A stretch of 64,000 nucleotides of DNA from Macrostomum lignano. Lineage: Eukaryota. How positions within the stretch are numbered: the first letter of the stretch is position 1; each line of letters begins with the position of its first letter. The translations under genes were made by a program, and so were the position numbers. Below are positions 1 through 30,309 of this stretch, piece after piece. Where the stretch lies: positions 1-64,000 of the forward strand of contig NIVC01002322.1 in NCBI GenBank assembly GCA_002269645.1, given 5' to 3'. The notes under the pieces are model-generated. The model ran no database searches, was not told the DNA's origin, and worked only from the letters and a program-made list of their open reading frames with translations.

Positions 1-74
1 GCCAACGCCACTCGCGTAAAAAAAGTTACAGAAGCACCCTGTGACCAGACCGTTTCTAATTATTATCTTCGCTT

Positions 75-1209: not shown

Positions 1210-1270
1210 CTATTCTAAATGTAGGCACACTGGCTCACAGCACTCGTCCCCTGTCCCTCCACTCGCGCAG

Positions 1271-3830: not shown

Positions 3831-3995
3831 TCCTTATCCAGCCTGAGCACCCCAAACTGACCAGTGAGTGCCCTTATCCAGCCTGAGCACCCCAAACTGA
3901 CCAGTGAGTGCCCTTATCCAGCCTGAGCACCCCAAACTGACCAGTGAGTGCCCTTATCCAGCCTGAGCACCCCAAACTGACCAGTGAGTGCCCTT
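3831..3995. repeat. 40-bp tandem repeat x~4
   Basis: The unit ccttatccagcctgagcaccccaaactgaccagtgagtgc recurs at 40-bp spacing. Confidence 0.95.
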
Positions 3996-9186: not shown

Positions 9187-10143
9187 ATGTCGGAAAACAC
9201 TCTCAAAGTTGGCGCCGACGAGAAGCCCGTTGACCAGCAGGCTGAAACTGAGAATCAAGACGAAGAATCCAACAAGAAGACTGAGGATCAAAACAAAGAT
9301 AACAAAGAAGCCGAGTCTAAGGATCAAGACAAAGACGACAAAGAAGCCAACGAGACCGAGGATCAAGACAAAGACGACAAAGAAGCCAACGAGACCGAGG
9401 ATCAAGACAAAGACGACAAAGAAGCCAACGAGACTGAGGATCAAAACAAAGACGACAAAGAAGCCAACGAGACTGAGGATCAAGACAAAGACGACAAAGA
9501 AACCAACAAGACTGAGGATCAAGACAAAGACGACAAAGGAGCCGAGATTGAGGATCAAGACGAGGAAGACAAAGAATCCGAGATTGAGGATCAAGACGAG
9601 GAAGACAAAGAATCCGAGACTGAGGATCAAGACAAAGAAGTCAACAAGAAGACTGAAGAGCTAGAGCAAGCAGCCAAGAAGACTGAGGATAAGGACCAGG
9701 CTGAAACTGGGAATACCAGAACTGTCATTCAGCCCGCTGACGATGATGAAGATTATGATGAAGACGAGGACGATGAAATTGTAGATAGTAATGAAGATGA
9801 TACTCCTCCAACTCCTCCTCATAAAAAGTACGAGTACATCCAACATACTAAAAATGATGATGGAACTGACCTGAAGTTGGAATCAAACGAAACGAGAATA
9901 CTGCGCACAGAGGAAGTAAAACAGAGTAAAAAAGAAGAGAAGAAACGAAAAAAGGAGGCCGAAAAGCAAGCTAAGTTAGAAAAGAAGCTAGCCAAGAAGA
10001 ATGAGAAGTTAAAGAAAAAGCAAGAGAAGATGGCTAAAAAGGAAGCGAAAAAGCTCGCGAAGAAGCAGGCGAAAGAGGAAAAAAAACGACGCGAAGACGA
10101 AATAAAGCGGGTGAAAGAGGAAAGGAAACAACGCGAAAAATAA
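9187..10143 (+). CDS. Highly charged repetitive protein: Asp/Glu-rich repeats (DQDKDDKEANETE) followed by a Lys/Glu coiled-coil tail
   Basis: Long ORF from ATG 9187 with codon-periodic repeats and unique non-repeat segments. aataaa follows at ~10169. No family recognised. Confidence 0.65.
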   Translation: MSENTLKVGADEKPVDQQAETENQDEESNKKTEDQNKDNKEAESKDQDKDDKEANETEDQDKDDKEANETEDQDKDDKEANETEDQNKDDKEANETEDQDKDDKETNKTEDQDKDDKGAEIEDQDEEDKESEIEDQDEEDKESETEDQDKEVNKKTEELEQAAKKTEDKDQAETGNTRTVIQPADDDEDYDEDEDDEIVDSNEDDTPPTPPHKKYEYIQHTKNDDGTDLKLESNETRILRTEEVKQSKKEEKKRKKEAEKQAKLEKKLAKKNEKLKKKQEKMAKKEAKKLAKKQAKEEKKRREDEIKRVKEERKQREK

Positions 10144-10482
10144 CAAAAGCAGGCAAAAGCTAAGTAGAATAAAAACAACCGATAAGCTGGAATCCCATCG
10201 ACACCGCACCAATAACTTTCTCAGTCATAAGGTTGCTTTGTCTTTTTGTTGTCGACTCATTGAGCATATGAAATTGATTTGAACAAATAAAAACGATTTG
10301 CGATAATTTCGTTTATTTTGAGTTAATTTAAATTGTAATTTTTTTCTTTATCAGATTACTGAAGGTTGAAACTATCTAACTACTCGGTTTAAAAAAATAA
10401 CATCGTAGCTTGAGCATCAGTGCATGACATACCCCGTACCGTAGCATCCAAAGAAGTTTGATAGCTAGTATCCGTATTAACA

Positions 10483-11492
10483 GCAACAACAACAACAACA
10501 ACAACAACAACAAAAACAACAACAACAACAACAAATTACGCAGCCCCGCAAGCAAAGTCGCAGAGCAGGGTGCGTCAGATGGCGCGCCGCAGAGCCTGAG
10601 AGCGGACGAAGTCCGCCCCGTTGGCAGTGTCGGGCGCCCCGGCGTCGCGTAGGAGGCAGTCCACGTATCGACGGGTTTGGGCCTGACCCCGCCTGAGCGG
10701 GCCCTGCAGGGTGAGCAGCAGGACGTCCTGAACAGGTTGGGGGCAGTAGCTCTGCCCGGATCATGCGGTGGCCCACCAGTTGACGTTGGCACCGGCGCAG
10801 GATGATGGACGGGCGCTGCAGCTTGGCCCGATCGTACAGGGCCTCTGTCCCGACGCTCTTGTCAGCTCGAAAGGCCGCACGGAGCAGTCCTGAGTGCGCC
10901 GAGTCCAGCTGCCGCTCCAGTGTAGCCGTCAGCGTCCACGTCTTAGCGTTGTAGAGCAGGACGGTTTCGACCACCGCCACCACAGCCGAGCCCTCTGGCG
11001 GTCGAGCAGCGTTTCGGACTGGACGACGGCCCGGAAGAAGGCCGCCCAGGCAAGTCCTCGGCGCCGCCGAAGGTTTTCCTCCACGTGAGGCACCAGACCG
11101 CCGAGGTAGATGAACCGCTGGCAGCGTGCTAGCTTGGTTGTCTGCCCGTCTGCGCCGCGGCACGTCAGGTCCGCTGGGATGTCGACCGGCACTGTCAGCA
11201 CCTCAGTCTTCAGAGTGTTGACAACCAGACCAACGCTCGATGCCACCTCGACCAGCTAGGCGCCTTCAACAAGGACAGGAGGGCGAGGTCGTCGGCGTAG
11301 CCAAACACGCTCAGGCGCTTTTCGCCGTGGCGGCGACCGATGCGTCTGCGCAGCAGGAAGCCATCGCCAGCCGAGGGGAGTGCGGTCTGAAGCACCCAGT
11401 CCAGCAGCAGCACGAAGAGCAACGGCGCCAGCGTGTCGCCCTGCAGAACTCCTGATGAAGTGTCGAACAGGTCAGACAGGCGTCACCACAGC
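10483..11492 (-). mobile_element. 5'-truncated, frameshifted RTE-like non-LTR retrotransposon fragment with (TTG)n 3' tail
   Basis: RT motifs SGVLQGDTLAPLLF, VFGYADDLALL and FIYLGG, C-terminal VDCLLRDAGAP..ALRRAI*, then (caa)n on the plus strand. Confidence 0.88.
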
Positions 11493-11512
11493 AATCCCAG
11501 AGCTACATGTAT

Positions 11513-11670
11513 CCAGAGTTCATCCAGACAACTGGACCTTTCTTTCTCCGGCAGGTCCGGTTCCAACTAGATTCCAATCCCAGAGCTATCCAGAGTTCAT
11601 CCAGACAACTGGACCTTTCTTTCTCCGGCAGGTCCGGTTCCAACTAGATTCCAATCCCAGAGCTATCCAG
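11513..11670. repeat. 77-bp direct tandem duplication abutting the RTE fragment 5' end
   Basis: The unit starting ccagagttcatccagac occurs at 11513 and 11590. It is mirrored at ~28785-28942. Confidence 0.9.
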
Positions 11671-12636
11671 TCTTCTCGAATGAATGCGAATCTTTCAACT
11701 TTACATGGCAACTGTCAGATTGCACAGGCTATAACCATTGTTGGTTGGCTGTTGACTTTGAAACAGGTGAAATCCGCACTTTTGTCTTTCTTTCGAAATA
11801 GAAAATAGTAGAAAAAGTTGCAATTGAAAGCAGAATATTTACACAGGACACCATTCACTGTTGGACAATCACATGGCTGAATTTTGAGACAGTCAGGTTT
11901 GTGCGAGGTTTCAGTGTAAAAAAAGTTACAAGCCAGCACAAATGACTTTTGGGAAGAACCTCGTAATTACCAGGATAGATACAATTATAATGAACATCCT
12001 TGAGGAACTTCACTGACCAACCCGAACTCCGAACAAAATTACCAACCGTAACGTCAGGACGGTGCAAGGCAGCGACGATACGTAGGAACTATCAGGGAAC
12101 GAAAGACGGTCCGCTTTTCCCTTTGTAGGACCAGAGAGAATAATGGTAAAAAACGAAAAAATTCAAGGAAAATATCAATAGCTACTTGGAAGAGGAAGTC
12201 AAAGAGAAAAATTCTGTTGCTAAAAAGTATCAGTAAGTAGTATATGCAGCAAGCGCGTCTCGATTTGTTCAAGAGTGAAGTTGTTGAAGAAGGTTCAGTT
12301 GAAAGCTACTGGAACAAAAAGGCACCTTAAATTAAAATACGAATTACTAGCTAATTACTGAATTCTCCATTCTCCCAACTTACGATTCAGGATTCAGATC
12401 CAATACGACTCGTATACTAAAAATTAAAGACTATAGATTCAATTTTCTAAACAAAAATAAGCTTCATCATAGTCTATTTCGTGGACATAGACTATAAATT
12501 TAATTTCACTCCTCCCAGTTCGGAACAGGTCTTTCAAAAGAGCTTGAATAGCCAATTTAAAGTCCTAGCGCGCTTAACTCGCTTAAGAGCAAATAAATCA
12601 AGCAAATTTAAACAGCTGAAGCCTTTAATTGCCAGC

Positions 12637-13053
12637 ATGCGGTCGCGTTCACAGTCACCTGCCGCCTCATCGAGCCAGTCGGAGAAGATGACAACGGATG
12701 CTCCAGCTCAGCTCCAGCGGGCCCGTCCAGCCAAGAGGAAACGCTCCGCTTCCAGGAGCACCGGCAAGAAACGCTCTGCTTCCAGGACCACCGGCAGGAA
12801 ACGCTCCGCCTCCAGGAGCACCGGCAGGAAACGCTCTGCTTCTAGGGGCACCGGCAGGAAACGCTCTGCTTCCAGGAGCACCGGCGGCAGGAAACGCTCT
12901 GCTTCCAGGGGAACCGGCAGGAAACGCTCCGCTTCTAGGAGCACCGGCAGGAAACGCTCTGCTTCCAAGGCCACTGGCAGGAAGCGCAGCCGAACAGCCA
13001 AGAAGTCATCAGCCAAACGCATGAAGATGGCCGAGAAGAAGCCGACGAAGTGA
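12637..13053 (+). CDS. Protamine-like / sperm nuclear basic protein candidate, copy 1
   Basis: 138 aa, intronless, R/K/S-rich, with 8 decapeptides (R/K)KRSAS(R/K)xTG. TATA-like ctataaat at ~12492. Confidence 0.7.
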   Translation: MRSRSQSPAASSSQSEKMTTDAPAQLQRARPAKRKRSASRSTGKKRSASRTTGRKRSASRSTGRKRSASRGTGRKRSASRSTGGRKRSASRGTGRKRSASRSTGRKRSASKATGRKRSRTAKKSSAKRMKMAEKKPTK

Positions 13054-13819
13054 AATTGGCGAGAGTTAGGCCTCGCTGATTGGCAGTCCACTACCTAAAC
13101 GATACAAGGACTCGGCTCCCATTATTTGCTATTTTTAGTTCAATCATTACCTCAGGAACATTAAAAAATCCACAGTGATTCAATGATACCGGGTATACTG
13201 TGCTTCTTAAACATTTTAGGGATTAAATTGGCCAGACTCTAGGCGAAATAAATAATTTTCCACTTTCTGTTCATGTAGGCAGCAGCTAACAGTCTCGAAT
13301 AAACAGAGAAAGACCAGATATGATTTTAAAAGCTAATGCTCTTAGACGCTTTTTCTTTTTCTTTACTCAAAAAAAGTGATAAAAAACAGCTGCTTATGAG
13401 CTAATGTATGAAAGTATGCAGACCCGAAAGAGGCAATTATGAATTATAACTGAGCTTGAAGTTTCTTCGAGACGAACGTAAAAAGCCCGTGAATAAGCCT
13501 CGGAAAAAGTGCACCATATACAGTATACTCGTATTGTATACGAGTACTTTGCTTCAGATGAAATTACAGTTACTTGTAGTTAAAAACCCTTTTACAGGAG
13601 CGTCGCCTTGGATTATGGTAGGGGGGGGGGCGGACACAGCCAAGAATTCTACATGTACGAGTACATGACTTAATCCCTACATGTATTTTGAGAATAGATG
13701 TTGTTAGCACTTAGTTTGTCGCCCTAAAGCAACGCTATTGATTTCAACAATTGGTTACAAGGTATAGGGTGAGGGGACAAAGCATTGGGATCCCAATACA
13801 CTGCCTATTGATGGGGGTT

Positions 13820-14125
13820 TCATAAACTCGAAGTTTCACAACGTCAAAAGCAACTTCCTTCAAAAGGTCAAAAACTCAATTTGCAGCCGCTATCACAAGA
13901 TCGAATTCAAGAGGTCGAAGTTTCACAACATCGAAAACTTTAGCAAAGGGCTTCATAAGGCTGAAATTGCACGTGGAAAACTATTTTTTCCGCATTGTGA
14001 ATCTTAAGTGGCTGCTATTCAAGTTTTTGGCGTCAAATTTCGACCTTATGAAGTCTCTTGCTAGAGTTTTCGACGTTGTGAAATAACTTGCTTTTCGACA
14101 TGAAATTTCGACCTTGTGAAGGCAC
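13820..14125. mobile_element. Foldback/MITE-like modular inverted repeat (tttcacaac..cgaaaa / ttttcg..gttgtgaaa family)
   Basis: Internal inverted modules. The same motifs occur at ~26330-26640 and 57896-58232. Confidence 0.55.
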
Positions 14126-15694
14126 CCCTATTGATCACATATTGACAACATTGATGTCCTATATATTGATTATCGATAGCTAATCTACAGATCTCGAATA
14201 TTGGGAAATTCTGAAAAGAACCATTTTTACGGTCTAAATACTAAAATCAATTGGGCGAGAAAAAAAAGAATTATTATCAAGATCATATTTTTCAGGGGAA
14301 GTCCTCATATGTATATAGCTAGTGCTTGCTTTAGCATGCTACTCGACAGCTAGAGGTTCGCACAAGGTGTTGCTAGTGCTATATATCGTCCTGAATTTGG
14401 CCTAAATCGCCATGAATTTAATTTAATATTTAACACAATAAACTATGAGATTTGTCAATGACTTGAAATAGGTCAAATGGTTCTTTAATCTAATTCTCTA
14501 GCAATCATTATAGTTTAGCAAATATTTATTAATCAAGGAATTTTTTAGCCAGTGCTCTTGCATTAATTAATTAAGTTAATTAGATTAATATGTCATTGAT
14601 ATATTTGTTATTATATAGTAGGCCTATTCAAATTTGCTCTGTTAAATGCTTGACTGAAATCAAATCAGTTTGAAATTTTCATTTTGTCCTCCTTTATAAA
14701 GTGCTATCTTTCTTTTTTACCTAAACCACAGAGGACAAATTGCTCAATAGATTGTCAACTAAACTGGCCTGATCATTCCCAGCTTCTGCAACTTGTCTAG
14801 CTTGGAATTGACAATAGACTCAAGAGTTTTAAGTGAAAGATAGATACAATATAGCAAAACTTTAAAGTAGATAAGCTCACATCTTGGCCTTGATACCCTT
14901 AATCATAGGTTGTCTCTACTAGTAGACTAGCTATGGCACTGGCTGAGGTCACATTGAAGAGCTTGTCAAGTTCTAATAGGTTTTTATTTAGAAGTCCAAA
15001 TAACTTTAATGCATATACAACAGTCATATCTATATGATATAATTAACTATGAAACCTAATAATGATGGAGAGCATATCTTGCATCTTTAGCCAATGGCCA
15101 TTATAGGCATAACTTAAGCAAGGTTGCAATGGTAACTTAAGTTTTGGGCACAAGTTGAGTAAGTCCCAAATTAGGTTAGCTTATCAAGATAATGCTAAAA
15201 GATATACCAAATTGCTATATTTATCAAATAATGCTATCAAATGGTAATCAAATGATAATTTTTAAAGATAGGCCTATGCTATAAGAAATTGGATATATTA
15301 ATAAATGGTGTTTGTAAGAAACATTTCAATCTCTTAGCTTATAAAAAAAACTAGAATCAATGTAGGTTTTCTACATTTTCTAAATAGGTCTAGCCATAAA
15401 ATATAATTGTATGCTAGTCAAGACTCTTAATACTTTTAAAAAGAATTGGTAGTATATACAAATTGCAATTTGGGTATTATTTTTCTAAAACCAAAATGTT
15501 AGGTTAAGGTATTGGGATCATTTAGCAATACTTATATTCCATAAATCTAATCTGCTGTTAATTGACTTTGGTATTAAGTTATAAAGATATAATAAATCCA
15601 TTTGTTTTAACTATTCTTTATTTTAATTATTATTTTTTTTTGCATTTTTAAATTTCAAGAAATAAATTATAAAAATTTTAGACTGGTTGATAAA

Positions 15695-16860
15695 ATGAAG
15701 TTAACATTGGAGTTTGGAGGTGGAGCAGAATTTCTTGTTGGCAATGTTAAAAAGCATGCAATTGATCTGCCAGATACACAGCAATGTAAATAGTTGGCCA
15801 GTTTAGTGATATTGACTCTTGTTACTATACATGTATCTTAATATAATGTCAACTAGCTGATGACCATGCTTCCATTTTATAGGGACCCTTGGCCAGTTGC
15901 TAGAATGGATCAAAGCTAATAAGCTGCAAGAGAGACCAGAGCTCTTCCTGCAAGGATCTTCTGTGTAAGCTGTTTTCAAACTTGTGTAGTTTTATTTCCT
16001 TGCTTCTGGCACATCTAAACCAGCTCTCTCTGTGTCTTCTATTACTGATTTCAGTCGGCCGGGCATTCTTGTACTAGTGAATGACACTGATTGGGAATTG
16101 CTGGTAAGCTATACTGAGCAATGGGGGGAGGGGTAAAGCAGTTCAGCAATAAATGCGTCCGCAGCTCTCATGCCACAACCAGTTCCATGCGTGGCAATGT
16201 TAATTTGTGACATGTGTATGGGGTTGTCTTGCAGTTCACACCCATGTGCACAGAATACCACAATGCTCATTCAGGCACCCTGAAGAAAAATCTCAATGCG
16301 AATTCATTTTGTGCTACTCTTCTCGTAAAGCTGTGGTAAAGTAGTAGGGAGAAGAATCACCATAGACGATATCACACTCGCATGGGCTTGTGATTTTTGC
16401 TTTGTGTTTTTAAGAAAGAGCCACATTCTTTTATTCTGCGACGAAAAGCAGTGCAGGTAGAAGTCTCAAGCCTATTCAGTGCCCATAAGGGCAAACCCTC
16501 AAGTCACAAAGAGTGTACACATGCATAACAGTTTGAAAAATTCGGTCCGTTGTACACCCCGTGTGAGCGCGTGCTGTGCCCTACTTACAGTATTTGCGCG
16601 TTTGTATGTGCTCAGGAGTGAGCGGAATGGGCAGAAATGCCTCGCTACTGGTTGTGGGATAATGTTGCCAAATGCTTTTTGCCAGGTTTCCCGCGGCCCT
16701 CCTGTGAATGAATTGTTTAATAATCTTAGCAACTAAAATATAGGTCTGCTAGCAACTCTGTGTCAAATGTCACTGTTTTCATCTATTTTAGGGCGAGCTC
16801 TCCTATCAGCTGAAGGACAATGACGATGTGGTATTCATATCAACTCTGCACGGCGGTTAA
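15695..16860 (+). CDS. URM1: Ubiquitin-related modifier 1
   Basis: Exons 15695-15785, 15883-15964, 16055-16103, 16792-16860 (all GT-AG) give MKLTLEFGGGAEFLV...[50 protein letters not shown]. Missed by the ORF track. Confidence 0.97.
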
Positions 16861-17589
16861 AATTATTGCCATCAATGACTTCGATTCAATTTGAAGTGAT
16901 AATTTCTGCAATTAAATGTAAATATTGATTCTCACTGTCTTCAACACAAAAAATTTACTGTCATTTGCTGTCCTTAAAATATTTTATATTGTTGTTGTAG
17001 CTGGAAAGACGAGTGTGATTAGTTAAAACAGGAGGTACCTCCATTCAATAGCATCAATGGACCATATGAATAAATCACAATGTGAGAAGCTGGTGTAACG
17101 CAAAATAGACACAGTCAGTGGCGTACGCAGGGGAGGGGGTAACGGAGGTTTGTGTACCGAGATTAGTGGTGCGGAGAAGCTGAGTAGCACTTTCCGCTAC
17201 TCCACCTTTTACTGGGCAGGCTATAAAACTGTCCTTTATTGTTGCAACTGGACACAATAGGTGTCTGCTTTTATCGGGTTCGTTTTGTTTACATTTTAAT
17301 TCCATTGAAACAATTCCCTATGGTGCCAGGTCCCATGGATATAGCAAATTTATATTCGCTAGCCACTGCGGTTAATATGAAAATCATAAAAATGTTTAAA
17401 TATAATGGCTTCAATCCTTCTTTAAAAACGATCTTGTTTTCTGTGCGTAAGCACAAGATTAACAAATTGGAGTAATCGTTCAGTTGCGAGATCTGCCTAC
17501 CATCTTTCTTTTCCCAGATCTATGGGATTGGGATAATGTAGTTGTAGCTCGGTGTGAAAGTATCCAAATGAATTTAGTTTACTTATAGG

Positions 17590-18045
17590 AACAATAACAA
17601 CAACAGAATACGCAGTTAGCGTCACAGGGCGCGCCTCAAGGCCAGGTCGCGAATGAACGCCACGCCGCCGGCCGAATCCGGGGCGCCGGCGTCAGCCAGC
17701 AGGCAGTCGACATCACAGCTTAGGTCGAGCGCTAGCTTTGCCAGTGCCCCTCTCCGCCAGGCGGCCTTGGGCGTGCGGCAGTTCAGCGTCCCGACCCGAA
17801 GCGTGCCATGCGGTACGGCTGGAACTTGATATAGATGAGCCTATTGGTCCCTGGCGCCACGCAGAAGATCCGTATGGGCCAGCACGGCAGCAGCTCGGTG
17901 GGAAGCACCACGTCGCCGACCGCGCCGATTTCGCTCACGCGGACGCTCGCTCCGCCGCCCTCGTTTGTTGGTCCTGCCGCTGTTGGCCGCCGCAGCAGTT
18001 AAGCGCGGCTCACCGCCCTGACCACTTGGAGGTAGCGACATTTAC
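17590..18045 (-). mobile_element. Internally deleted non-autonomous RTE-like element (endonuclease N-terminus fused to RT C-terminus)
   Basis: The minus strand reads TLRVGTLNCRT..LALDLSCD|VDCLLADAGAPDSAGGVAFIRDLALRRAL*, then a short (ttg) tail. Its 3' part is homologous to the 3' end of the 10483-11492 element. Confidence 0.8.
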
Positions 18046-18531
18046 TTGCACCAATGTGTAAATTTATTGGCACCTATAGGAAAAATCATCCTTTGCAGTA
18101 GCTAGCCTAAATTACGGTAAAAACCATTGTTATAAAGCTGTAATCTAAAGATTTTATGAATATTTTAGAATACATCAGCGCTAAACTCTCGAAATTAGGT
18201 ACCTATGCTTTTTCTTCATCCGGATTGTTAGCAAACAATCGAGCAGCTTTACTTAATTAACTTTATGAAAAGGCGAGTAAAGATATCGGTACATAAATAG
18301 CTTTTTCATCTGTCTTATCTTCTGACTAAAACATTTCGCAAGAATTTTTAAAGACAAGAAGAAACTTTGCGCCAAAAATTGAAGAAGTATTCATTCTTTA
18401 TTTGTCGCAGCGAAGGGCTCCTAACGCACAAGAATCCACGTATAATGTTCATATCATAGATTTGGTTCTATCAGAACCCATTCACTAACTAAAACGTCGC
18501 AATCTTGTGGTCTTTTAGAGTCGCATCACTT

Positions 18532-19588
18532 TCACTCGCTATCCTCCTCGGGAGTTGGAGATGGGCGCGGCCTTCGTGGACGGTTCTCTCTCTTTTCGTC
18601 ATCCTCCTCGGGAGTTGGAGATGGACGCGGCCTTGGACGGTTCTCCCTCTTGTCGTCATCCTCAGGAGTTGGAGATGGACGCGGCCTTGGACGGTTCTCC
18701 CTCTTGTCGTCATCCTCCTCAGGAGTTGGAGATGGACGCAGCCTTGGACGGTTCTCCCTCTTGTCGTCATCCTCCTCAGGAGTTGGAGATGGGCGTGGCC
18801 TTGGACGGTTCTCTCTCTTGTCGTCGTCATCACTATCGTCCTCATCATCATCCTCCTCAGGAGTTGGAGATGGACGCGGCCTCGATGGACACGGCCTTGA
18901 ATGACGGTTCTCCCTCTTGTCGTCATCCTCCTCAGGAGTTGGAGATGGACGCGGCCTTGGACGGTTCTCCCTCTTGTCGTCATCCTCCTCGGGAGTTGGA
19001 GATGGACGCGGCCTTGGACGGTTCTCTCTCTTGTCGTCATCCTCCTCAGGAGTTGGAGATGGGCGTGGCCTTGGACGGTTCTCTCTCTTGTCGTCGTCAT
19101 CACTATCGTCCTCATCATCATCCTCTTCAGGAGTTGGAGATGGACGCGGCCTCGATGGACACGGCCTTGAATGACGGTTCTCTCTCTTGTCGTCGTCATC
19201 ACTATCGTCCTCATCATCATCCTCCTCAGGAGTTGGAGATGGACGCGGCCTCGATGGACACGGCCTTGAATGACGGTTCTCTCTCTTGTCGTCATCCTCC
19301 TCGGGAGTTGGAGATGCACGCGGCCTTGGACGGTTCTCTCTCTTGTCGTCATGCTCCTCGGGAGTTGGGGATGGCGGCGGCCTTGGTGGACGGTTCTCCC
19401 TCTTGCTTGCATCCTCCTCAGGAGTTGGAGATGGAGGAGGTCTTGGCATCTGTAATATTTCCCATTTTTCATTGATTTTTGCACTCTGGTAGAGGGCTTC
19501 TCCAAAGTTATTGCATTTCAGAAACAGTCGAATTTATTACCGCAGCAGCCACTGCAATTGTCACCAGAAGAAGCACAATCAACTTCAT
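18532..19588 (-). CDS. Secreted multi-copy peptide precursor (signal peptide plus 14 Pro/Arg-rich segments separated by 13 KR sites)
   Basis: TATA (tatataaa) at ~19669-19676. Exon 1 19588-19541 encodes MKLIVLLLVTIAVAAA, followed by GT..AG intron 19540-19450. Exon 2 19449-18532 encodes (KR-ENRPRPRPSPTPEEDDD)n. Confidence 0.8.
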
Positions 19589-20311
19589 GTTCTCAGGAGT
19601 AAAGATTTGACCAGCTGTAATTTGACCAAACTCAAACTCCAAAGATTTGGTTGATTTCTGCTGGTACATTTATATAGACAGCCAGCTCCGATTTTCTCCA
19701 GTGATCTCACAATGCCTGTTTACTCAGACTGAAAGTCGTCGCTTTGTTTCCACGTGCTCAAAATCTTTTGTTTATGTCATTGTTTCTTTCTCTGCTTTAT
19801 TTTTAAGAAAAACTGCTGTATCGTCAAAATCTAGATTATGAAAAGAATTGCAACAAGTAAAACAATGACTTATTCTCTGAGACGAAGCTGTCAATGGATA
19901 AAATCCGTTTTGGGTATTGTTTCGCTGAGACTTTGGGATATCATGTGGCTCTCGATGAATAATAGACTTGAATAACAGAATAAGACTTAGCCTAGTCTCA
20001 GAAATTCTTTCAGTTTGAGCACCAGGTGGAAGTTAAGAATTGTCAATAGAAGCATTTTCATTTATTCAACTCTGGTCTTTGAGAACAAAATGGATTTTTG
20101 ATCGTCTATTTTTAGCCTCAACCCGAAGAAAGTTTGTGCCTGATCGATGTTTTCAGCTTACGCTTACCAAAGAAAGTTTCAATGGTCACGTGGGTCTTGA
20201 CTTACTTGACTTAGCTGCAGGGGGCGTCCGGCGGATGCAGCGGGGAGGCGGAGGAGACCGCCCATTCCGCTAGCCCCTGGCGACCAACGACTTCCGTTGA
20301 AGTGGTGTCGC

Positions 20312-23300
20312 TCAGGGGGACCCGTCGGTCTCGCCTGCAGCGCGGTCCTCCTCACCGGCGGTGGGGAAGAAGTCAGCTCGTCCCGTGTCCCTGAGGTACC
20401 GGGCGAGCAGCGGGATGCTCTCGGGCCTGCAAACGTCGGAGAGAACCGGGTTAGGCCCTAGGTGAGTGAGCCTGGCCCTGGTGAAGACCGGGCAGTGGCA
20501 GATAAAATGCTCGGCGTTTTCACTGCCTGAGCGGCAGAAGGGGCACCGCTCCTCGGGTACTTGGCCCTGAAGGAAGCGGTGGCGAGAGAAGCAGCCATGC
20601 CCGGAGAGGGCCATGCTAACTGCTCTGAGGTCTCTGCGGTTGAGCCTGAGGAGGGCCCTACGCAGGAGAGGGGAGGGGCAGGGGACAGCAGCGCGGGATT
20701 GCCTACAATTCCGGGTGTCGTGCCACCTGCGGAGATGCTCGGAGTCAGCCCAGCGCTTAACGCGGGAGTTGATCACCGAGGCGGGGATGGGGGCACCCGG
20801 GCCCGGCCCCAGCAGCGCGCCGGCGGAGCCAGCCTTGACCAGCAGGTCAGCGCGCTCGTTGCCGAGGAAGCCGGCGTGGCCCGGGATCCATCTGAGCTCC
20901 ACCTGGTTGCCTAGCGCAAGCCCGTTGAGCTGGGTGTTGCAGTCCAGGACGGACCTGGAGCTGGCGGTGCTGCGGCAGAAGGGCTACTTGGCTGTCAGAG
21001 TGAAAAATAAATTTCCGACCGCTAAGCTGCCTTCGGCGCAGCTCTGCCGCGCAGGAGCTGATGGCAAGCACCTCGCTCTGAAAAACACTGGAGTTGAGCC
21101 CAGTGTGCTGGGAGTAGCTCCACACCACTTCTCCCTTGAAGAAGACGCAAGCTCCGAAGCCTGAGAGACCATGCCTCATAGAGCCGTCAGTGTAACAGTG
21201 GACTTCAGAATCGTTCCAGCTGTCACTCGCCTCGTGTCGAGGCTGAATAGTGACCTTATACCTTTGGCTCAGGAGAAGGGTGGCTGGGATCGAGTCCGTG
21301 GGAATGTTAAGCCCGCCACACTCATCGAGAGCCTTGAGGCAGAGGTCAGAGTGCGGGATAAGCGACCGCTTCTTAAAGGCCCGCACTTTCTTGAAGGCCA
21401 CCCCAGCATCCAGAAGACGCCGGGTGCTCTTCGCGGCCTCTCCTTTGATATAAATATCCAGAGGAGGGGCACAGAGGAAGGCATTCATGCCTTCAAAAGT
21501 AGAGGGTGGAGCGCCCATAGTCATGCGGCAGGCTCTGCCCTGGATTTTGTAGAGAGCGTCGTGGTTGCTCTTGACGCTCAGGCCGCTAGCCCACACGAGG
21601 CTGGCGTAACTGATCGAGGGGCGGATGATGGCAGTGTAAATCCACCACAGCTTCCTGGGGGTGAGCCCCCAGGTGGTGCCCACGGCGCGCCTGATCTGAG
21701 CCAGGACAGCCAGGGCTTTTTTGGCTTTCGTTTGAATGTGCGGGGTCCAGTTAAGCCTGTGGTCCAAAGTGAGGCCCAGGCAGCGGACCTGCTTCTCCAT
21801 GGAAATATCCTTTCCATAGAGGGTGAGGGGCTTAATGGTCCAGAGCAGTTTGTTGGTAAACATGACCGCTGTGGTCTTCGACTCTGAGAGTCTAAGGCCA
21901 CATTGGTTTGCCCAGCGCTCCGCTCGATCCAGAAAGCCTTGCAGAAGGTCTCTGATGGTATCAACCGAGGGGCCCGCGCATATTGCGGTCACATCATCGG
22001 CATAGCCCACCTTGAGAATGGGGTCGTGGAGATCACTGCAAAGCAACTCATCCATGACCATGTTCCAGAGAACGGGGGTGAGAACTCCGCCCTGGGGGCC
22101 CCCTTTCTGGACAGGCGCCGAAAGAGAGCTGCCGTTCAGGTGGGCCACAACAGTGCGGTTTCGGATCATGAACATGATCCACCGGACAAGGTGAGGGTGC
22201 GTGGCCCTGGATTCCAGGGCTCTGCAAAAGGCCTCGAAGATGACGTTGTCGAAGGCCCCCTCAATGTCCAGGAAAAGCAAGAGGGCAAAGCCGCTGCCAA
22301 GAACGGCCCTCTCCAGGAAGTCAACAATGACATGGAGGGCACTCTCGGTAGACCTGCCCGCGCGGAAGGCGTGCTGGTTCTGCGAGAGTGGGAAGCGCTT
22401 CAGCTCGACCGAAAGTAGGCGCCAAAGCACCAGTCTCTCGAGGAGCTTGAGGCAGAAAGAAGTGAGGCTGATAGGCCTGAAGGCCTTCACCGATTGATAG
22501 TCGCTCTTTCCAGGCTTGGGGATAAAGACCACCCGGGCCTCTCTCCACGCAACTGGTACAGCCCAGCTCCACACAAGCTCGAAGGAGACGACAGAGCAGG
22601 TCCAGGAAGCGGTGGTTCTTCACCGCCTCGTGCAAGAACGCTGGGTAGATGCCGTCGGGCCCAGGCGCCTTGAACTGGTTAAAGGACCTTGCCGCTCTAA
22701 TAATGCGGTCTTTGGTGATTATAGACTTTGCTAGGCCTTGCCCTCCCACTGTGTGGTCAGGCGGGCCCTGCTGAGTCGGAGATTTAGGGAAGAAACTGTT
22801 GAGCATTAGCTCTAGAGTCTCTTCCGAGTTCTCTGTGACTGAGCCATCAGGTCTCTTCACAACAGAGAGTTTAGAAAAACGGTCGTTAGTGAGTGCCTTA
22901 ACCACGCGGGCTACGGGGCGAGAGCCCTCAAGCCCTTCGCAATATTGGCGCCACTTGGCCGTCTTGGCCCTTCTGACTTGGCCCTTAAACTCGTGGATCG
23001 CACGGGTATAGGCCTCTCTGTCAGATGGGTCTTTGGTTTTGAGCGCTCGCCTTTGGAGGGTCCTGGCTCGGCGCCGTAGGGCCCCGAGCTCTGGGTTCCA
23101 CCAGGGAGCAGATTTCTTGCCTTTATAGGCTTTTAGAGGGCAGGCTGCTTCAAAGGCAGTGGTGATCGCCCCGCCCAGGGAGGAGGCGAGATCATCCACC
23201 ACCTGGCAGTCAGAGAGGTCACTGGGGGGTCAAGATCCCGAATGCCGCGGCTCAGCTTCGAGCCAAAGGCGGCCCAATCGGTGTTCCTGACGTTCCGACT

Positions 23301-23999
23301 CCAAGTGACCTTAGGCTTTTGCTTGGTCGGCCCAATGCAAAAGCGGATAAAGCGGTGGTCCGAGAGTGAGTCCTCGTCCCACACTCGCCAGCCCGTGACT
23401 TCGGAAAGCAGTCCGGGTGAGGCGATGGTGGTGTCAATGACTTCGGCCCACCACCCATAATTGAACGTTGGTGCATTGCCCACGTTACAGAAATTGAGGT
23501 TTGTGCTGCTGACGTAGGCCAGCAGCTCCTCGCCTCTGTTATTGGTGTTCTTGCTGCCCCAATGCAGGTGGTGTGCGTTCACATCCCCTGCAATGAGCAG
23601 CTCGAACCGGCGGGACGCGGCGTAGTCAATGAGGTTGACTAGTGCGTCGCAGACTACTGGGGCATCGCCTGGGAAATAGGCGGATGCTACCAGCACAGGT
23701 TTATTTGGAATGAGGTTATTGATTTGAACAACACAGATGTCCCCAGTCGAGAGATCAGGTCTCATCCATGCCTCAAAAGCTTTTGCAGCAAAGACCAGAG
23801 ATCTTGGGCGAGGCTGAGAGCCCGCCATGCAAAAACAGTGGTAGCCAGATGGCACATTATTTGGCTTACCTTAAGTCATCCAGGGCTCCTGCACGAAGAC
23901 CAGGCCCGGAAGCTGTTGCTCTGTCGTGCGCATCAGGTTGACTGACGCCGCCACGCAGTGCTGGGTGTTGATCTGCAGACACCAGGTAGCCACTGGCAT
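20312..23999 (-). pseudogene. LINE ORF2 (AP endonuclease, reverse transcriptase, RNase H, C-terminal CCHC) with one premature stop and ~3 frameshifts
   Basis: APE: LQINTQHC..S, VQEPW, GDVNAHH..WGS, SLSDH. RT: IPKPGK..RPISLTS, FLDIEGAFDN, GGPQGGVL, YADD. RNase H: YTDGS, QSEVLAI, SDSQ, WIPGHAG..GNERAD. Knuckle: CPFC..ENAEHFICHC. Confidence 0.92.
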
Positions 24000-25649
24000 C
24001 AGTGCAGATCGGGTGTTGCAGTCGCCAGGAGTTCCTCCTCCTCCTCGGCGCTCACCAGCTTCGGGTCGGGGTCGCCGGTGTCCATGGGCTCTTCTTCAGC
24101 AAAAGGCCCCCGACTGGTCGGAAGGCAATAGGCAGCGTTCACCGCCCTTCGCCCACCGGCCACGGGGTCCTCCGCTTCCGACTGGCCCAATGCCCTGGAG
24201 CAGCCAGCCGCCTGGGCAGGCGGGTCCGTCTCCAGTCGGCCCTGCCCCGAGGGGTTGGGCCCAGCTGGGACGTCCCCACCCTCCCTGGACGAGCTGGTGC
24301 GCCTAGGCGTCCCGGCGACCTCTCTCCTCAGCTGGGTGATTTTAGCGGTGCGGACCGCCTCAGCTGCGCGCTGATACAGGCCGCGCCGCTTGGTGCTGCG
24401 CGCCGGGCGTCGGTCTCCTCCGCCCTCAGCAGCGCGCTCGGCTTTGCCCGCGCGGCCGTGCTGCCGGGCGGGGCTGTTTGCTTTGGCAGCCTGAGCAGAA
24501 GCTCGCGCTTCGACCCCGGCTGCTTCGGCATTCCGCCCGCCCTGCTCACTGCCACGGGTGAGGGTCGGCCTCGTAGAAGCGGATGCGCAACTTCCAAAGG
24601 CCGACGTTGATGAAGCTGCCGTGTGGATAGCGCCTCATCCAGGCGTCCGACAGCCCCAGGATGGCTGTGAAGCCAGTGCCGTCGGTGCGCTCAAGGGTGT
24701 CATGCACCACTAGGCCCGCGGTGGGAAGCTCTCGGTTGACTGCTAGCAGTCCTTTCCGGAGCTCGTCGGCAGAGGTAACGACGCTCCTGGCCGGAACCCA
24801 GATTCAATGCCTCTTGGTCCGGGGGCGTTCGTCCTCTCTGCAGAAGGCTCAATTGAGGTCCCAGCTCTGCTCGGGCAGCAGCTCAAGGAGCCGCCGACCC
24901 GAGTCAGCATCACTAGGCCAAATGAGAAGGCACGAGTCCCTCGTCGCATTCGAATGAATGTGCAGAGGCGTGCCCTTCAGAGTTTGCTTCCACAGGAGGC
25001 CATCAACGGCACCTCTCACCTGCTTCAGCTGGTCGGGAGACAGGCGCGCGTCCTTCCCCAGGATGACAACCGCCGGTTGCCTCTTTGCTGCATCAGCGTA
25101 GGAGGCCCGGGGGTCGGTGGAGCATTCTTCAGGTGGGCTGTCCACCCTCCCGTCTGCATCGGCCTCCCTATCCTGGGCAGGGACTTCAGTGGGCTCAAGG
25201 CCCTCTTCCACCACCGCCCCAGATTGGGAAGCTTCCGCTGCCGCGGGCCGTTGGCCCCTGGCGCCGGTTAGGCTTCCGCCCTCCTTGGCCCGCCTCGCCT
25301 TGTTAAGTCGACGGCGGGCAGCTCCAGAGGTGGTGCTCAGCTGCTTGGCAGCTGGAGTAGCAGGTGTCTTCTCGGAGGCACCGCTCAGAGTTGGCTCCAC
25401 GGGTCTCGCCGGGGCGTCCCCGATGGTAGCAGATGGTATGGCCGCGGAGTCCACGGCCCCAGCCGAGGCCGGAGGCACTGTGTCATCCACAGCCGGTTGG
25501 TCACTTCGGTTAGAAGCCATTGGCTGGAAAAGAAAAAGGTGGGACTTCCTGCAGAACACAGGCAAAGAGCCGCAAGGCCGCAACCCCAAACCAAGCGGCA
25601 GGCCCCCAAAAAGCAAAATACCACCTTGCGGGGGGACCCAAAAGCGCAA
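23999..25649 (-). pseudogene. LINE ORF1 (gag-equivalent; central region resembles DUF4780-type LOA ORF1) with in-frame stops
   Basis: ORF 25649-24849 continues in frame past stops as IWVPARS..ELRKGLLAVNRELPTAG..GLWKLRIRFY. The last segment ends at TGA 24001-23999, overlapping the ORF2 ATG (TGATG). Confidence 0.65.
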
Positions 25650-27401
25650 GGGGAACCGTTAGCGACCAGACTACTCCCTGGCCAAGCGTCCATCAGCACG
25701 GAGTTACACTGGGACATTAGAGGGTGCGTTTATATGGTCACACCAGGACCCGGCGCCAACGAATCAGCTCGGCAAGCCCCAAGAGCCTGCCTTAACACCC
25801 ACGGGACGAGTACCCTTCGAAGTGCGCCTTGCAAGGTGAAAATCAGGAGACAGAGTCTCTTGAGCTATCAGCCCGCCAGGGGAGGCAGGTGTGAGCATCG
25901 CTGGCTGGGATAAGGCCATACCAGTCTCATACTGCACAGATAGTTCACCACGCCATTGCGTGCAGGACCCGGGGTCACGTGGGTCATTTAAAATCAATCG
26001 TAGTCATCACAAGAAATGTGTGAAACGCGACTGCATGGCGAACCTTGTGCGTCTTCGTAAAAGGTCCGGACCACTGTCTGCTAGACGAGCTCTCTAGCTG
26101 TCGAGTAGCATGCTCAAGCAAGCACTAGCTATATACATATGAGGACTTCCCCTGAAAAATATGATCTTGATAATAATTCTTTTTTTCTCGCCCAATTGAT
26201 TTTAGACCGTAAAAATGGTTCCTTTCAGAATTTCCCCAATATTCGAGATCTGTAGATGAGCTATCGATAATACGAGCGTAACGTATACGAGTATAGGACA
26301 TTTTTGTTGTCAATATGTGATCAATAGGGGTGCCTTCACAAGGTCGAAATTTCACGTCGAAAAGCAAGTTATTTCACAACGTCGAAAACTCTAGCAAGAG
26401 ACTTCATAAGGTCGAAATTTGACATCAAAAACTTGAATAGCAGCCACTTAAAGATTCACAATGCGGAAAAAATAGTTTTCCACGTGCAATTTTAACCCTC
26501 TGAAGCCCTTTGCTAAAGTTTTCGATGTTGTGAAACTTCGACCTCTTGAATTCGATCTTGTGATAGCGGCTGCAAATTGAGTTTTTGACCTTTTGAAGGA
26601 AGTTGCTTTTGACGTTGTGAAACTTCGAGTTTATGAAACCCCCATCAATAGGCAGTGTATTGGGATCCCAATGCTTTGTCCCCTCACCCTACCTTGTAAC
26701 CAATTGTTGAAATCAATAGCGTTGCTTTAGGGCGACAAACTAAGTGCTAACAACATCTATTCTCAAAATACATGTAGGGATTAAGTCATGTACTCGTACA
26801 TGTAGAATTCTTGGCTGTGTCCGCCCCCCCCCCCTACCATAATCCAAGGCGACGCTCCTGTAAAAGGGTTTTTAACTACAAGTAACTGTAATTTCATCTG
26901 AAGCAAAGTACTCGTATACAATACGAGTATACTGTATATGGTGCACTTTTTCCGAGGCTTATTCACGGGCTTTTTACGTTCGTCTCGAAGAAACTTCAAG
27001 CTCAGTTATAATTCATAATTGCCTCTTTCGGGTCTGCATACTTTCATACATTAGCTCATAAGCAGCTGTTTTTTATCACTTTTTTTGAGTAAAGAAAAAG
27101 AAAAAGCGTCTAAGAGCATTAGCTTTTAAAATCATATCTGGTCTTTCTCTGTTTATTCGAGACTGTTAGCTGCTGCCTACATGAACAGAAAGTGGAAAAT
27201 TATTTATTTCGCCTAGAGTCTGGCCAATTTAATCCCTAAAATGTTTAAGAAGCACAGTATACCCGGTATCATTGAATCACTGTGGATTTTTTAATGTTCC
27301 TGAGGTAATGATTGAACTAAAAATAGCAAATAATGGGAGCCGAGTCCTTGTATCGTTTAGGTAGTGGACTGCCAATCAGCGAGGCCTAACTCTCGCCAAT
27401 T

Positions 27402-27818
27402 TCACTTCGTCGGCTTCTTCTCGGCCATCTTCATGCGTTTGGCTGATGACTTCTTGGCTGTTCGGCTGCGCTTCCTGCCAGTGGCCTTGGAAGCAGAGCG
27501 TTTCCTGCCGGTGCTCCTAGAAGCGGAGCGTTTCCTGCCGGTTCCCCTGGAAGCAGAGCGTTTCCTGCCGCCGGTGCTCCTGGAAGCAGAGCGTTTCCTG
27601 CCGGTGCCCCTAGAAGCAGAGCGTTTCCTGCCGGTGCTCCTGGAGGCGGAGCGTTTCCTGCCGGTGGTCCTGGAAGCAGAGCGTTTCTTGCCGGTGCTCC
27701 TGGAAGCGGAGCGTTTCCTCTTGGCTGGACGGGCCCGCTGGAGCTGAGCTGGAGCATCCGTTGTCATCTTCTCCGACTGGCTCGATGAGGCGGCAGGTGA
27801 CTGTGAACGCGACCGCAT
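27402..27818 (-). CDS. Protamine-like / sperm nuclear basic protein candidate, copy 2
   Basis: Translation identical to 12637-13053. Confidence 0.7.
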   Translation of the reverse strand: MRSRSQSPAASSSQSEKMTTDAPAQLQRARPAKRKRSASRSTGKKRSASRTTGRKRSASRSTGRKRSASRGTGRKRSASRSTGGRKRSASRGTGRKRSASRSTGRKRSASKATGRKRSRTAKKSSAKRMKMAEKKPTK

Positions 27819-29970: not shown

Positions 29971-30309
29971 GTTAATACGGATACTAGCTATCAAACTTCT
30001 TTGGATGCTACGGTACGGGGTATGTCATGCACTGATGCTCAAGCTACGATGTTATTTTTTTTAAACCGAGTAGTTAGATAGTTTCAACCTTCAGTAATCT
30101 GATAAAGAAAAAAATTACAATTTAAATTAACTCAAAATAAACGAAATTATCGCAAATCGTTTTTATTTGTTCAAATCAATTTCATATGCTCAATGAGTCG
30201 ACAACAAAAAGACAAAGCAACCTTATGACTGAGAAAGTTATTGGTGCGGTGTCGATGGGATTCCAGCTTATCGGTTGTTTTTATTCTACTTAGCTTTTGC
30301 CTGCTTTTG

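What the first reader, a model, noticed from the sequence alone, without database searches (positions are those of the whole stretch)
12637..13053. Orphan protamine-like protein with (RKRSASRxTG)8, present in two identical copies
Seen: intronless 138-aa protein dominated by R/K/S, with no acidic residues in the repeat block, a TATA-like box upstream, and an identical copy at 27402-27818. Established: bivalve protamine-like SNBPs (Mytilus PL, Spisula PL-I tails) have basic RSxS-type repeats phosphorylated during spermiogenesis. Inference: an undescribed sperm nuclear basic protein in this lineage, lacking the H1 winged-helix core.
Basis: partly seen in the sequence, partly recalled or inferred. 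Interest (0 to 1): 0.7.

Follow-up and report, generated by a model that had tools for sequence, protein, structure and literature searches.

The report
Duplicated flatworm gene for basic repeat protein
In the flatworm Macrostomum lignano (not a bivalve), two identical inverted copies of a small reading frame would encode a very basic, serine-rich repeat protein that could pack sperm DNA, but whether it is expressed is untested and repeat-derived frames like it also arise by chance in this genome.

Summary
Window 12637-13053 (+) is a 138-codon ORF with eight RKRSASRxTG units, pI about 12 and no acidic residue in the repeat block. An identical copy lies at 27402-27818, but on the minus strand. 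The two copies sit in the arms of a 5.1-kb inverted duplication with an 11.7-kb spacer.

The window is the first 64 kb of Macrostomum lignano contig NIVC01002322.1. This is a free-living flatworm, so the bivalve framing is wrong.

The protein is an orphan. It has no Pfam domain, no PDB relative and no homologue among 1.8 billion representatives. The one related sequence is a repeat in a doubtful M. lignano gene model.

Evidence for a real sense-strand gene:
- TATAAA plus an Inr-like motif lie upstream, and the ORF starts at the first ATG after them, with A at -3.
- Two AATAAA signals follow the stop codon.
- Variation among repeat units falls mostly at wobble positions.

Evidence against:
- The 30-nt minisatellite is open in three frames.
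- The wobble test fits one antisense frame better.
- An off-frame ORF elsewhere in the window is even more "protamine-like".
- No annotation or transcript evidence could be reached.

Verdict: a plausible lineage-specific gene for a basic nuclear protein. The sperm-chromatin role is the leading guess (about 0.3) and is unproven.

The parts
12493..12498 (+). TATAAA box of copy A, 144 nt upstream of the ATG
   Evidence: It is the only TATAAA on either strand in 11800-13900.
12514..12521 (+). Initiator-like CCCAGTTC (A at 12517), 24 nt after the first T of the TATA box; putative transcription start
   Evidence: Read from the sequence. The match to YYANWYY is my inference.
12637..13053 (+). Copy A of the 138-codon ORF. 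The ATG is in the context gccagcATGc and is the first ATG after the TATA box.
12736..12987 (+). 30-nt minisatellite, 8.3 copies, encoding (RKRSASRxTG)8
13247..13252 (+). AATAAA, 193 nt after the stop codon. A second AATAAA is at 13298-13303.
   Evidence: There is no AATAAA on the minus strand in 11800-13900.
27402..27818 (-). Copy B of the ORF, identical to copy A in DNA and protein
27468..27719 (-). 30-nt minisatellite of copy B
27957..27962 (-). TATAAA box of copy B, the mirror of 12493-12498
   Evidence: It lies inside the 100% identical core. Coordinates follow from x+y=40455.
9259..14355 (.). Left arm of the inverted duplication. It contains most of the intact acidic gene (9187-10143; its first 72 nt lie outside the arm), a GC-rich segment ending in (AAC)n, and copy A.
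26092..31464 (.). Right arm. It contains copy B, the same GC-rich segment, and a decayed copy of the acidic gene with no start codon, an in-frame stop and frameshifts.
10484..13630 (.). Core of the arms, 100% identical to 26825-29971 over 3147 nt, while both flanking arm segments differ by 0.6-2%
14356..26091 (.). 11.7-kb spacer between the arms. It holds an AT-rich stretch, an acid/proline-repeat ORF (18532-19449, minus) and a frameshifted GC-rich non-LTR retrotransposon (about 20312-25650, minus).

Best explanation
A Macrostomum-specific, single-exon gene, present as two identical inverted copies, encodes a 15-kDa, intrinsically disordered, extremely basic protein. About 60% of its coding sequence is a 30-nt coding minisatellite.

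Inferred mechanism. The repeated RKR clusters take the protein into the nucleus. There its roughly 50 Arg/Lys side chains neutralise DNA phosphates and compact chromatin. Each unit has Ser residues in a basophilic-kinase context (RxRxxS), and their phosphorylation would hold the protein off DNA until it is needed. The most likely setting is the spermatid, where M. lignano chromatin condenses into discrete bodies. That would make it a protamine-like sperm nuclear basic protein of independent, repeat-born origin.

Shown: the ORF, its composition, the duplication, the signal arrangement and the orphan status.

Inferred: transcription, translation, nuclear localisation, DNA binding, phosphoregulation and sperm specificity.
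For: - ORF and composition.
- Signals on the sense strand only: TATAAA 144 nt upstream with an Inr-like motif, no ATG between it and the start codon, A at -3, and AATAAA 193 and 244 nt after the stop. This combination occurs at 1.2% of ATGs in the window. Neither the antisense ORF nor the off-frame control ORF has it.
- Five of nine variable repeat columns are sense wobble positions. All non-synonymous changes are R<->K or fall in one permissive codon (S/T/G/A). The only indel is one codon.
- GC3 of 0.70 matches three conserved genes of the window, at 0.74.
- There are eight RxRxxS and eight G[RK]KR motifs, and no hydrophobic segment.
- No domain was found and no secondary structure was predicted.
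- A related KRSASR repeat, read in the same frame, occurs in another M. lignano model, A0A1I8IJ38.
- M. lignano sperm chromatin condenses, and about half of its germline-enriched genes are Macrostomum-specific (PMC5816591). No sperm basic protein of a flatworm is described in the searchable library.
- Both copies are complete and identical, while the neighbouring gene's second copy has decayed.
Against: - No transcript, peptide or annotation could be reached. The exact products of all three open frames are absent from the protein collection.
- The neighbouring acidic gene also carries a coding minisatellite, yet it is annotated. The repeat filter of the GenBank annotation (PMC5730564) therefore does not fully excuse the absence.
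- The array is open in three frames.
- A strict synonymous count is better for the wobble-sharing antisense frame (7 of 9, P about 0.002) than for the sense frame (5 of 9 when GGC/GGA is read in its own unit, P about 0.06; 4 of 9 in the script's count against the consensus).
- The codon-usage score does not favour the sense frame.
- An off-frame ORF in the same window is more basic still, so composition proves nothing.
- The related repeat in A0A1I8IJ38 carries an Asp in each unit and sits in an implausible gene model.
- The sperm role rests on composition alone.
Confidence: 0.33

Rival explanations
1. It is a non-coding minisatellite. The 30-nt array merely happens to lack stop codons, and the ORF is a by-product that is never translated. 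At most it yields a non-coding transcript. The duplication is an ordinary segmental inverted duplication.
For: - TRF reports 96 rows in 64 kb, and only about a third of the periods are multiples of 3, as chance predicts.
- Three frames are open across the array.
- The sequences just outside the array look like degenerate repeat units, so their basic character may be inherited from the repeat.
- A more basic off-frame ORF exists at 30997-31503.
- No annotated product exists in any frame.
- The sense-frame synonymous excess is only P about 0.06-0.14.
Against: - Seven of nine variable columns are silent in one frame or conservative in the other (P about 0.002-0.008), which is unexpected for unconstrained DNA.
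- The TATA, first-ATG and AATAAA arrangement occurs at only 1.2% of ATGs.
- The single indel is in frame.
Confidence: 0.3
2. It is a real basic nuclear protein, but not a sperm protein. It could be, for example, a nucleolar, RNA-binding or general chromatin-associated factor, or a substrate or scaffold for basophilic kinases, expressed somatically or in neoblasts.
For: The gene-likeness evidence is the same as for the best explanation. The RS, RxRxxS and basic clusters also occur in nuclear RNA-binding and nucleolar proteins (my own knowledge). Nothing found here is specific to the testis.
Against: - There is no RRM or other domain.
- Small, domain-free, lineage-specific proteins with pI 12 are most often spermatid chromatin proteins in animals (my own knowledge).
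- Germline genes are the class richest in Macrostomum-specific genes (PMC5816591).
Confidence: 0.2
3. The coding strand is the opposite one. The 104-aa ORF 12708-13022 (-) (mirror 27433-27747, +) encodes (LEAERFLPVx)n, and the basic frame is its antisense shadow.
For: Seven of nine variable columns are strictly synonymous in this frame (P about 0.002). It also has the highest codon-usage score of the six frames, 0.357 against 0.173. ATTAAA lies 78 nt after its stop codon.
Against: - It has no TATAAA and no AATAAA, five upstream ATGs within 250 nt, and T at -3.
- Five of its seven silent sites are wobble positions shared with the sense frame. The other two are AGG<->AAG, which is the most conservative change possible in the sense frame.
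- It has no Pfam match.
- The ORF ends only 28 nt beyond the array.
Confidence: 0.07
4. It is a neuropeptide or prohormone precursor. Each unit ends in G-[RK]-K-R, the classical amidation and dibasic cleavage signal, which would release eight copies of SASRxT-amide.
For: There are eight G[RK]KR motifs at exact 10-residue spacing. Flatworm neuropeptide precursors are often lineage-specific multi-copy repeats (my own knowledge).
Against: There is no signal peptide. The maximum 9-residue Kyte-Doolittle hydropathy is -0.08 over the whole protein and 0.52 in the in-frame upstream extension. The TATA and Inr-like motifs lie directly upstream, with no room for a leader exon.
Confidence: 0.03

Closest known systems
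Protamine-like (PL-III/PL-IV type) sperm nuclear basic proteins of bivalves
   Same: Both are small, highly basic (K+R 35-50%), rich in Ser and Ala, free of Cys, and lack a globular winged-helix domain. Ser phosphorylation is expected in both. The description of the bivalve proteins is from my own knowledge.
   Different: There is no detectable sequence relationship. The host is a flatworm, not a mollusc. The regular 10-residue tandem repeat encoded by a minisatellite is not a described feature of those proteins. Expression and localisation were not tested.
Vertebrate protamine P1 (Pfam PF00260)
   Same: Both are arginine- and serine-containing DNA-condensing peptides with RS-type phosphorylation sites near the N-terminus; the target starts MRSRSQSP. 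Both come from small TATA-driven genes (my own knowledge).
   Different: There is no Pfam match. Arg is only 22%, against more than 45%. Lys is abundant, there is no Cys, and the protein is about three times longer.
Drosophila atlas, a putative de novo gene for a basic protein required for spermatid chromatin condensation (PMC8445463, seen)
   Same: It is a precedent for a lineage-restricted orphan gene with no domains that acts in sperm chromatin condensation.
   Different: The two are unrelated in sequence. atlas has genetic and expression evidence, and the target has none. The target is built from tandem repeats and is duplicated.
SPKK-repeat tails of sea-urchin sperm histones H1 and H2B
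   Same: Both use short basic Ser-containing repeats that bind DNA and are switched by phosphorylation during spermiogenesis (my own knowledge).
   Different: Those repeats are appended to histone folds. The target has no histone domain and no [ST]P[KR][KR] motif.
Palindromes carrying testis genes on mammalian sex chromosomes
   Same: Both have inverted arms of several kb with a unique spacer. The arm core here has zero differences while the flanks have diverged, as expected from arm-to-arm gene conversion.
   Different: The arms are much smaller (5 kb). The animal is a hermaphrodite without sex chromosomes. Identity could be an assembly-polishing artefact, and testis expression is unknown.

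Membership tests
Vertebrate-type protamine (PF00260) | Match to the family profile | tested here: not met
   The Pfam scan returned only a sub-threshold HC2 hit.
Vertebrate-type protamine (PF00260) | Arg well above 45% of residues, length under about 65 aa | tested here: not met
   Arg is 30 of 138 (22%) and the length is 138 aa.
H1-derived protamine-like proteins (PL-I/PL-II) | Winged-helix linker-histone globular domain | tested here: not met
   No Linker_histone hit. No secondary structure in the AlphaFold model.
Protamine-like SNBP, compositional class | K+R about 35-50 mol%, rich in Ser and Ala, very few acidic residues (definition from my own knowledge) | tested here: met
   K+R 36%, S 22%, A 13%, D+E 2%. 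An off-frame control ORF also meets this criterion.
Sperm nuclear basic protein (functional class) | Expression restricted to spermatids or testis | not testable with these tools
   No transcriptome access. No annotated product exists.
Sperm nuclear basic protein (functional class) | Protein present in mature sperm chromatin | not testable with these tools
   No M. lignano sperm proteome was found in the library.
Neuropeptide/prohormone precursor | N-terminal signal peptide | tested here: not met
   Maximum 9-residue hydropathy is -0.08.
Neuropeptide/prohormone precursor | Repeated peptides flanked by dibasic sites with a C-terminal Gly | tested here: met
   Eight G[RK]KR motifs.
SR/RS-domain splicing proteins | RRM domain together with an RS-dipeptide domain | tested here: not met
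   No RRM. There are 15 RS and 9 SR dipeptides, but inside RKRSASR units.
Chlamydial histone-like Hc2 (PF07382) | Profile score above the gathering threshold | tested here: not met
   18.7 bits against a cut-off of 40. The hit is compositional.
Non-coding minisatellite | No frame-specific constraint on variation between units | tested here: inconclusive
   Sense frame: 5 of 9 columns silent (P about 0.06). Antisense frame: 7 of 9 silent (P about 0.002). There are only nine variable columns.
Gene-conversion-maintained palindrome | Arm-to-arm identity higher in part of the arms than elsewhere in the same arms | tested here: met
   No differences in 3133 nt, against 21 events in 1430 nt of flanking arm. 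P(0) is 1e-8 or less. An assembly-polishing artefact is not excluded.

The most novel reading that the evidence does not exclude
A protamine-type sperm chromatin protein arose de novo in the Macrostomum lineage from an expanding 30-nt minisatellite. It is kept as two identical copies by arm-to-arm gene conversion in a small autosomal palindrome of a hermaphrodite. That would be the first sperm nuclear basic protein identified in a flatworm, and a miniature parallel to the testis-gene palindromes of mammalian sex chromosomes.
Probability: 0.15. Interest if true: 0.6.

Novelty: new member of a known kind. Interest (0 to 1): 0.3.

Why it matters
No sperm nuclear basic protein of a flatworm turned up in the searchable literature. 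Yet M. lignano is a genetic model in which sperm chromatin visibly condenses into discrete bodies, and RNAi, transgenesis and electron microscopy are routine there.

A validated candidate would open the study of histone replacement in Platyhelminthes. It would also give a clean example of a chromatin protein born from a coding minisatellite.

If the frame is not expressed, the case is still a useful warning. In repeat-rich genomes, protamine-like ORFs appear as by-products of minisatellites, and one certain example lies 18 kb away in the same window.

Tried and rejected
- **Exact-product look-ups.** I tried the 138-aa protein, the M18 start, the 190-aa extension, the antisense ORF (both starts) and the +1-frame ORF. 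None is on record.
- **Word-index homology search.** It returned nothing. It also missed a relative that the exhaustive search later found, so I treat it as uninformative for this low-complexity query.
- **Exhaustive HMMER search.** It gave 47 hits. On reading them, all but one are unrelated proteins that share only a 10-residue periodicity. The exception is M. lignano A0A1I8IJ38, which carries GK[KM]RSASRDAG repeats inside an implausible 1007-aa model.
- **Other databases.** PDB gave nothing even at E<=10. Rfam and tRNA scans of the window gave nothing.
- **Codon-usage scoring.** Scoring against three conserved genes of the window did not separate the frames.
- **Looking for an independent copy.** Contig NIVC01003724.1 (L002), reached through the Pellino gene, overlaps window 1-11462 and matches the left arm apart from microsatellite length. 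It stops short of the target in the stretch I could fetch, so no independent copy was available for dN/dS.
- I tried to reach the rest of that contig with the spliced 305-aa product of the neighbouring gene. The tool turned the look-up away, and I did not try any other route.
- **GC-rich arm segment.** I suspected that 10477-11250 is a truncated LINE. It has no Pfam hit and no similarity to the LINE in the spacer, so that remains a guess.
- **Giant transposon with 5-kb terminal inverted repeats.** I considered and dropped this. The spacer holds only a LINE and repeat ORFs, with no transposase or polymerase.
- **Bacterial-type promoter and terminator scan.** It is irrelevant for this eukaryote.

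Full report
**What is in the sequence.** Window 12637-13053 (+) is an ATG-to-stop frame of 138 codons. It has three parts:
- a 33-residue Ser/Ala/Gln-rich head, MRSRSQSPAASSSQSEKMTTDAPAQLQRARPAK;
- eight units matching [RK]KRSAS[RK]xTG, where x is S, T, G or A and one unit has an extra Gly;
- a 24-residue Lys-rich tail.

TRF sees the array as a 30-nt period with 8.3 copies and 85% matches at 12736-12987. The protein would be 15.0 kDa with pI about 12, K+R 36%, S+T 31% and no Cys. It has three acidic residues, all outside the array. The stated second copy at 27402-27818 translates to the same protein only as the reverse complement.

**Where it comes from.** A 315-codon exon at the right end of the window is 100% identical to the branched-chain ketoacid dehydrogenase kinase BOX15_Mlig025482g1 of Macrostomum lignano. 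That gene lies at 61897-63454 of contig NIVC01002322.1 of assembly GCA_002269645.1, which are the same numbers as in the window. The window is thus the first 64 kb of that contig. The animal is a free-living hermaphroditic flatworm, not a bivalve. Other conserved genes in the window are a Pellino exon (1294-2133) and an AN1 zinc-finger ORF (42501-43118). [quoted passage not shown] TRF returns 96 rows for this window.

**The duplication.**
- The two ORF copies lie in the arms of an inverted duplication, 9259-14355 and 26092-31464, separated by 11.7 kb.
- The spacer contains an AT-rich stretch, an acid/proline-repeat ORF, and a GC-rich non-LTR retrotransposon. The retrotransposon has endonuclease, reverse-transcriptase and a weak, sub-threshold RNase H match, and its reading frame is split into overlapping pieces.
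- Each arm carries three things: a gene for an acidic, Lys/Glu-rich protein; a GC-rich segment ending in an (AAC)n microsatellite; and the target.
- The left copy of the acidic gene (9187-10143) is intact. It is annotated as a gene on an overlapping contig.
- The right copy has lost its start, has an in-frame stop and frameshifts, and is about 83-89% identical at protein level.
- By contrast, the arms show no difference at all over 10487-13619 (3133 nt), which includes the target and its flanks. The arm segments on either side of this core differ at 4 sites in 694 nt and at 17 events in 736 nt.
- At those rates, 18-46 differences would be expected in the core, so P(0) is 1e-8 or less.
- Either the core has been homogenised by arm-to-arm gene conversion, or assembly polishing made it uniform. 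One assembly cannot tell these apart.
- The diverged flanks show that two distinct copies do exist.

**Is it a gene? Evidence for.**
- On the plus strand, a single TATAAA (12493) lies 144 nt before the ATG. It is followed after 24 nt by CCCAGTTC, which fits an initiator.
- No ATG lies between the TATA box and 12637, and the start codon has A at -3.
- AATAAA occurs 193 and 244 nt after the stop codon.
- On the minus strand of the same 2.1 kb there is no TATAAA and no AATAAA. The antisense ORF is preceded by five ATGs.
- Over all 2004 ATGs of the window, the combination of TATAAA within 250 nt, no intervening ATG, and AATAAA within 400 nt of a 417-nt ORF is found 25 times, or 1.2%. That count includes the two target copies.
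- Neither the off-frame control ORF nor the other repeat ORFs show this combination.
- Among the eight units, nine columns vary. Five of these are sense wobble positions and are silent. Two are AGG<->AAG (Arg<->Lys). Two fall in the one variable codon, which gives only small residues.
- The single length change is one whole codon.
- GC3 is 0.70, against 0.74 in conserved genes of the window.

**Is it a gene? Evidence against.**
- A stop-free 30-nt unit opens the whole array, and three of six frames are open here.
- The sense-frame synonymous excess is weak: 5 of 9 silent, P about 0.06-0.14.
- The antisense frame that shares wobble positions, (PVLLEAERFL)n, has 7 of 9 silent columns, P about 0.002. 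The two AGG<->AAG changes are CTG<->TTG Leu codons in that frame.
- The array therefore looks constrained as coding sequence, but the repeat test alone does not identify the strand. It leans the wrong way for the basic frame.
- Codon-usage scoring is equally ambiguous.
- Composition is no argument. The ATG-ORF 30997-31503 (-) is an off-frame reading of the decayed acidic gene copy. It encodes (RIKTKTTKKPTRP)n with K+R 44%, which is more basic than the target.
- No product of any of the three frames is in the protein collection.
- The GenBank annotation of this assembly used a core-genes subset that drops transcripts overlapping repeat annotations (PMC5730564), which weakens that negative.
- However, the acidic neighbour, with its own coding minisatellite, was annotated.

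**Relatives.**
- Pfam gives only a sub-threshold compositional hit to chlamydial Hc2, at 18.7 bits against a cut-off of 40.
- PDB gives nothing at E<=10.
- The exhaustive HMMER search of 1.84 billion representatives returns 47 hits, all confined to the repeat block.
- On reading them, nearly all are unrelated proteins with 10-residue periodic repeats.
- One is related: M. lignano A0A1I8IJ38. It contains about 25 units of GK[KM]RSASRDAG with several in-frame length variants.
- That model is 1007 aa of mostly implausible sequence, and each unit contains an Asp. It shows only that a related repeat exists elsewhere in this genome.
- The target is thus an orphan, restricted as far as can be seen to Macrostomum.

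**What it most likely does.** If translated, the product has several predictable properties:
- It has no hydrophobic segment; the maximum 9-residue hydropathy is -0.08.
- It has no predicted secondary structure; mean pLDDT is 59.8 and pTM 0.12 in a single-sequence model.
- It has about 50 positive charges and basic clusters of the kind that act as nuclear import signals.
- It has eight RxRxxS and ten [RK][RK]xS sites.

The simplest mechanism is electrostatic binding and compaction of nucleic acid, switched by serine phosphorylation.

In animals, small domain-free proteins of this kind are most often spermatid chromatin proteins (my own knowledge). M. lignano sperm chromatin condenses into discrete bodies, and about half of its germline-enriched genes are Macrostomum-specific (PMC5816591). 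The melav2 study proposed an unidentified protamine-like target (PMC2795745). No flatworm sperm basic protein appears in the searchable literature.

| Reading | My estimate |
|---|---|
| Sense frame is a real coding gene | about 0.55-0.6 |
| Given that, a sperm-chromatin role | about 0.5 |
| Non-coding repeat | 0.3 |
| Basic nuclear protein with another role | 0.2 |
| Antisense coding | 0.07 |
| Neuropeptide precursor (G-[RK]KR sites present, no signal peptide) | 0.03 |

**Comparison with known kinds.**
- It works like a protamine-like SNBP in composition only.
- It fails membership of the vertebrate protamine family and of the H1-derived PL proteins: no profile match, no winged helix, Arg only 22%.
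- It meets the loose compositional definition of the PL class, but so does an off-frame artefact.
- The defining functional features, spermatid expression and presence in sperm chromatin, cannot be tested here.
- The closest conceptual precedent is an orphan basic spermatid protein such as Drosophila atlas (PMC8445463).
- The inverted arms with an identical core recall testis-gene palindromes of mammalian sex chromosomes, on a much smaller scale.

**Verdict.** The feature is real and correctly described. It is misplaced taxonomically, and its function is undecided. It is a credible but unproven candidate for a lineage-specific basic nuclear protein. One strand-specific RNA-seq mapping would settle most of the uncertainty. 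Interest is modest (0.3). It would rise to about 0.6 if the sperm role and the gene-conversion palindrome were both confirmed.

Noticed in passing
window 9187-10143 (+); decayed copy 30316-31462 (-): This is a 318-codon ORF for a protein with an acidic 13-residue repeat (DQDKDDKEANETE, from a 39-nt minisatellite) and a Lys/Glu-rich tail, with no Pfam match. The identical sequence on contig NIVC01003724.1 is annotated as a 305-aa gene, probably with a 39-nt GT-AG intron at 9640-9678 or 9916-9954. The right-arm copy is a pseudogene: no start codon, an in-frame stop, and frameshifts.
   Followed up: partly
window 30997-31503 (-): This off-frame ATG-ORF of the decayed acidic-gene copy encodes (RIKTKTTKKPTRP)n with K+R 44%. 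It shows that protamine-like ORFs arise as minisatellite by-products in this genome.
   Followed up: yes
window about 20312-25650 (-): A GC-rich (57-64%) non-LTR retrotransposon lies in the palindrome spacer. It has a putative ORF1, Exo_endo_phos_2, RVT_1 and a weak, sub-threshold RNase H match. ORF2 is split into four overlapping frames, so the copy is frameshifted.
   Followed up: partly
window 10477-11250 (-) and mirror 29209-29975 (+): A GC-rich segment with 105-228-aa ORFs ends in an (AAC)n/(GTT)n microsatellite and is present in both arms. It looks like the 3' end of a truncated retroelement. It has no Pfam hit and no similarity to the LINE in the spacer.
   Followed up: partly
window 18532-19449 (-): A 305-codon ORF made of 57-nt repeats encodes (PRPRPSPTPEEDDDKRENR)n. 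It has no Pfam match and no product on record, and three frames are open. Its coding status is unknown.
   Followed up: partly
window 44736-46650: A 24/45-nt minisatellite of about 1.2 kb is open in four frames. One is a 508-aa (DDDEDYGA)n ORF and another a 442-aa His/Arg-rich ORF. This again shows how repeats inflate ORF lists here.
   Followed up: no
L002 (NIVC01003724.1:52827-76996) against window 1-11462: A second contig of the same assembly overlaps the start of this contig at 99.4% over 7.7 kb, but only 93% in the 28-nt repeat at 95-1202. By its length it should end about 0.6 kb past the left arm. This indicates assembly redundancy or a haplotype break at the palindrome.
   Followed up: partly
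window 1294-2133 (+), 42501-43118 (+), 61897-63454 (-): The conserved genes flanking the locus are Pellino (FHA C-terminal part plus RING exon), an AN1 zinc-finger protein, and branched-chain ketoacid dehydrogenase kinase. They are useful synteny anchors for finding the locus in other Macrostomum genomes.
   Followed up: partly
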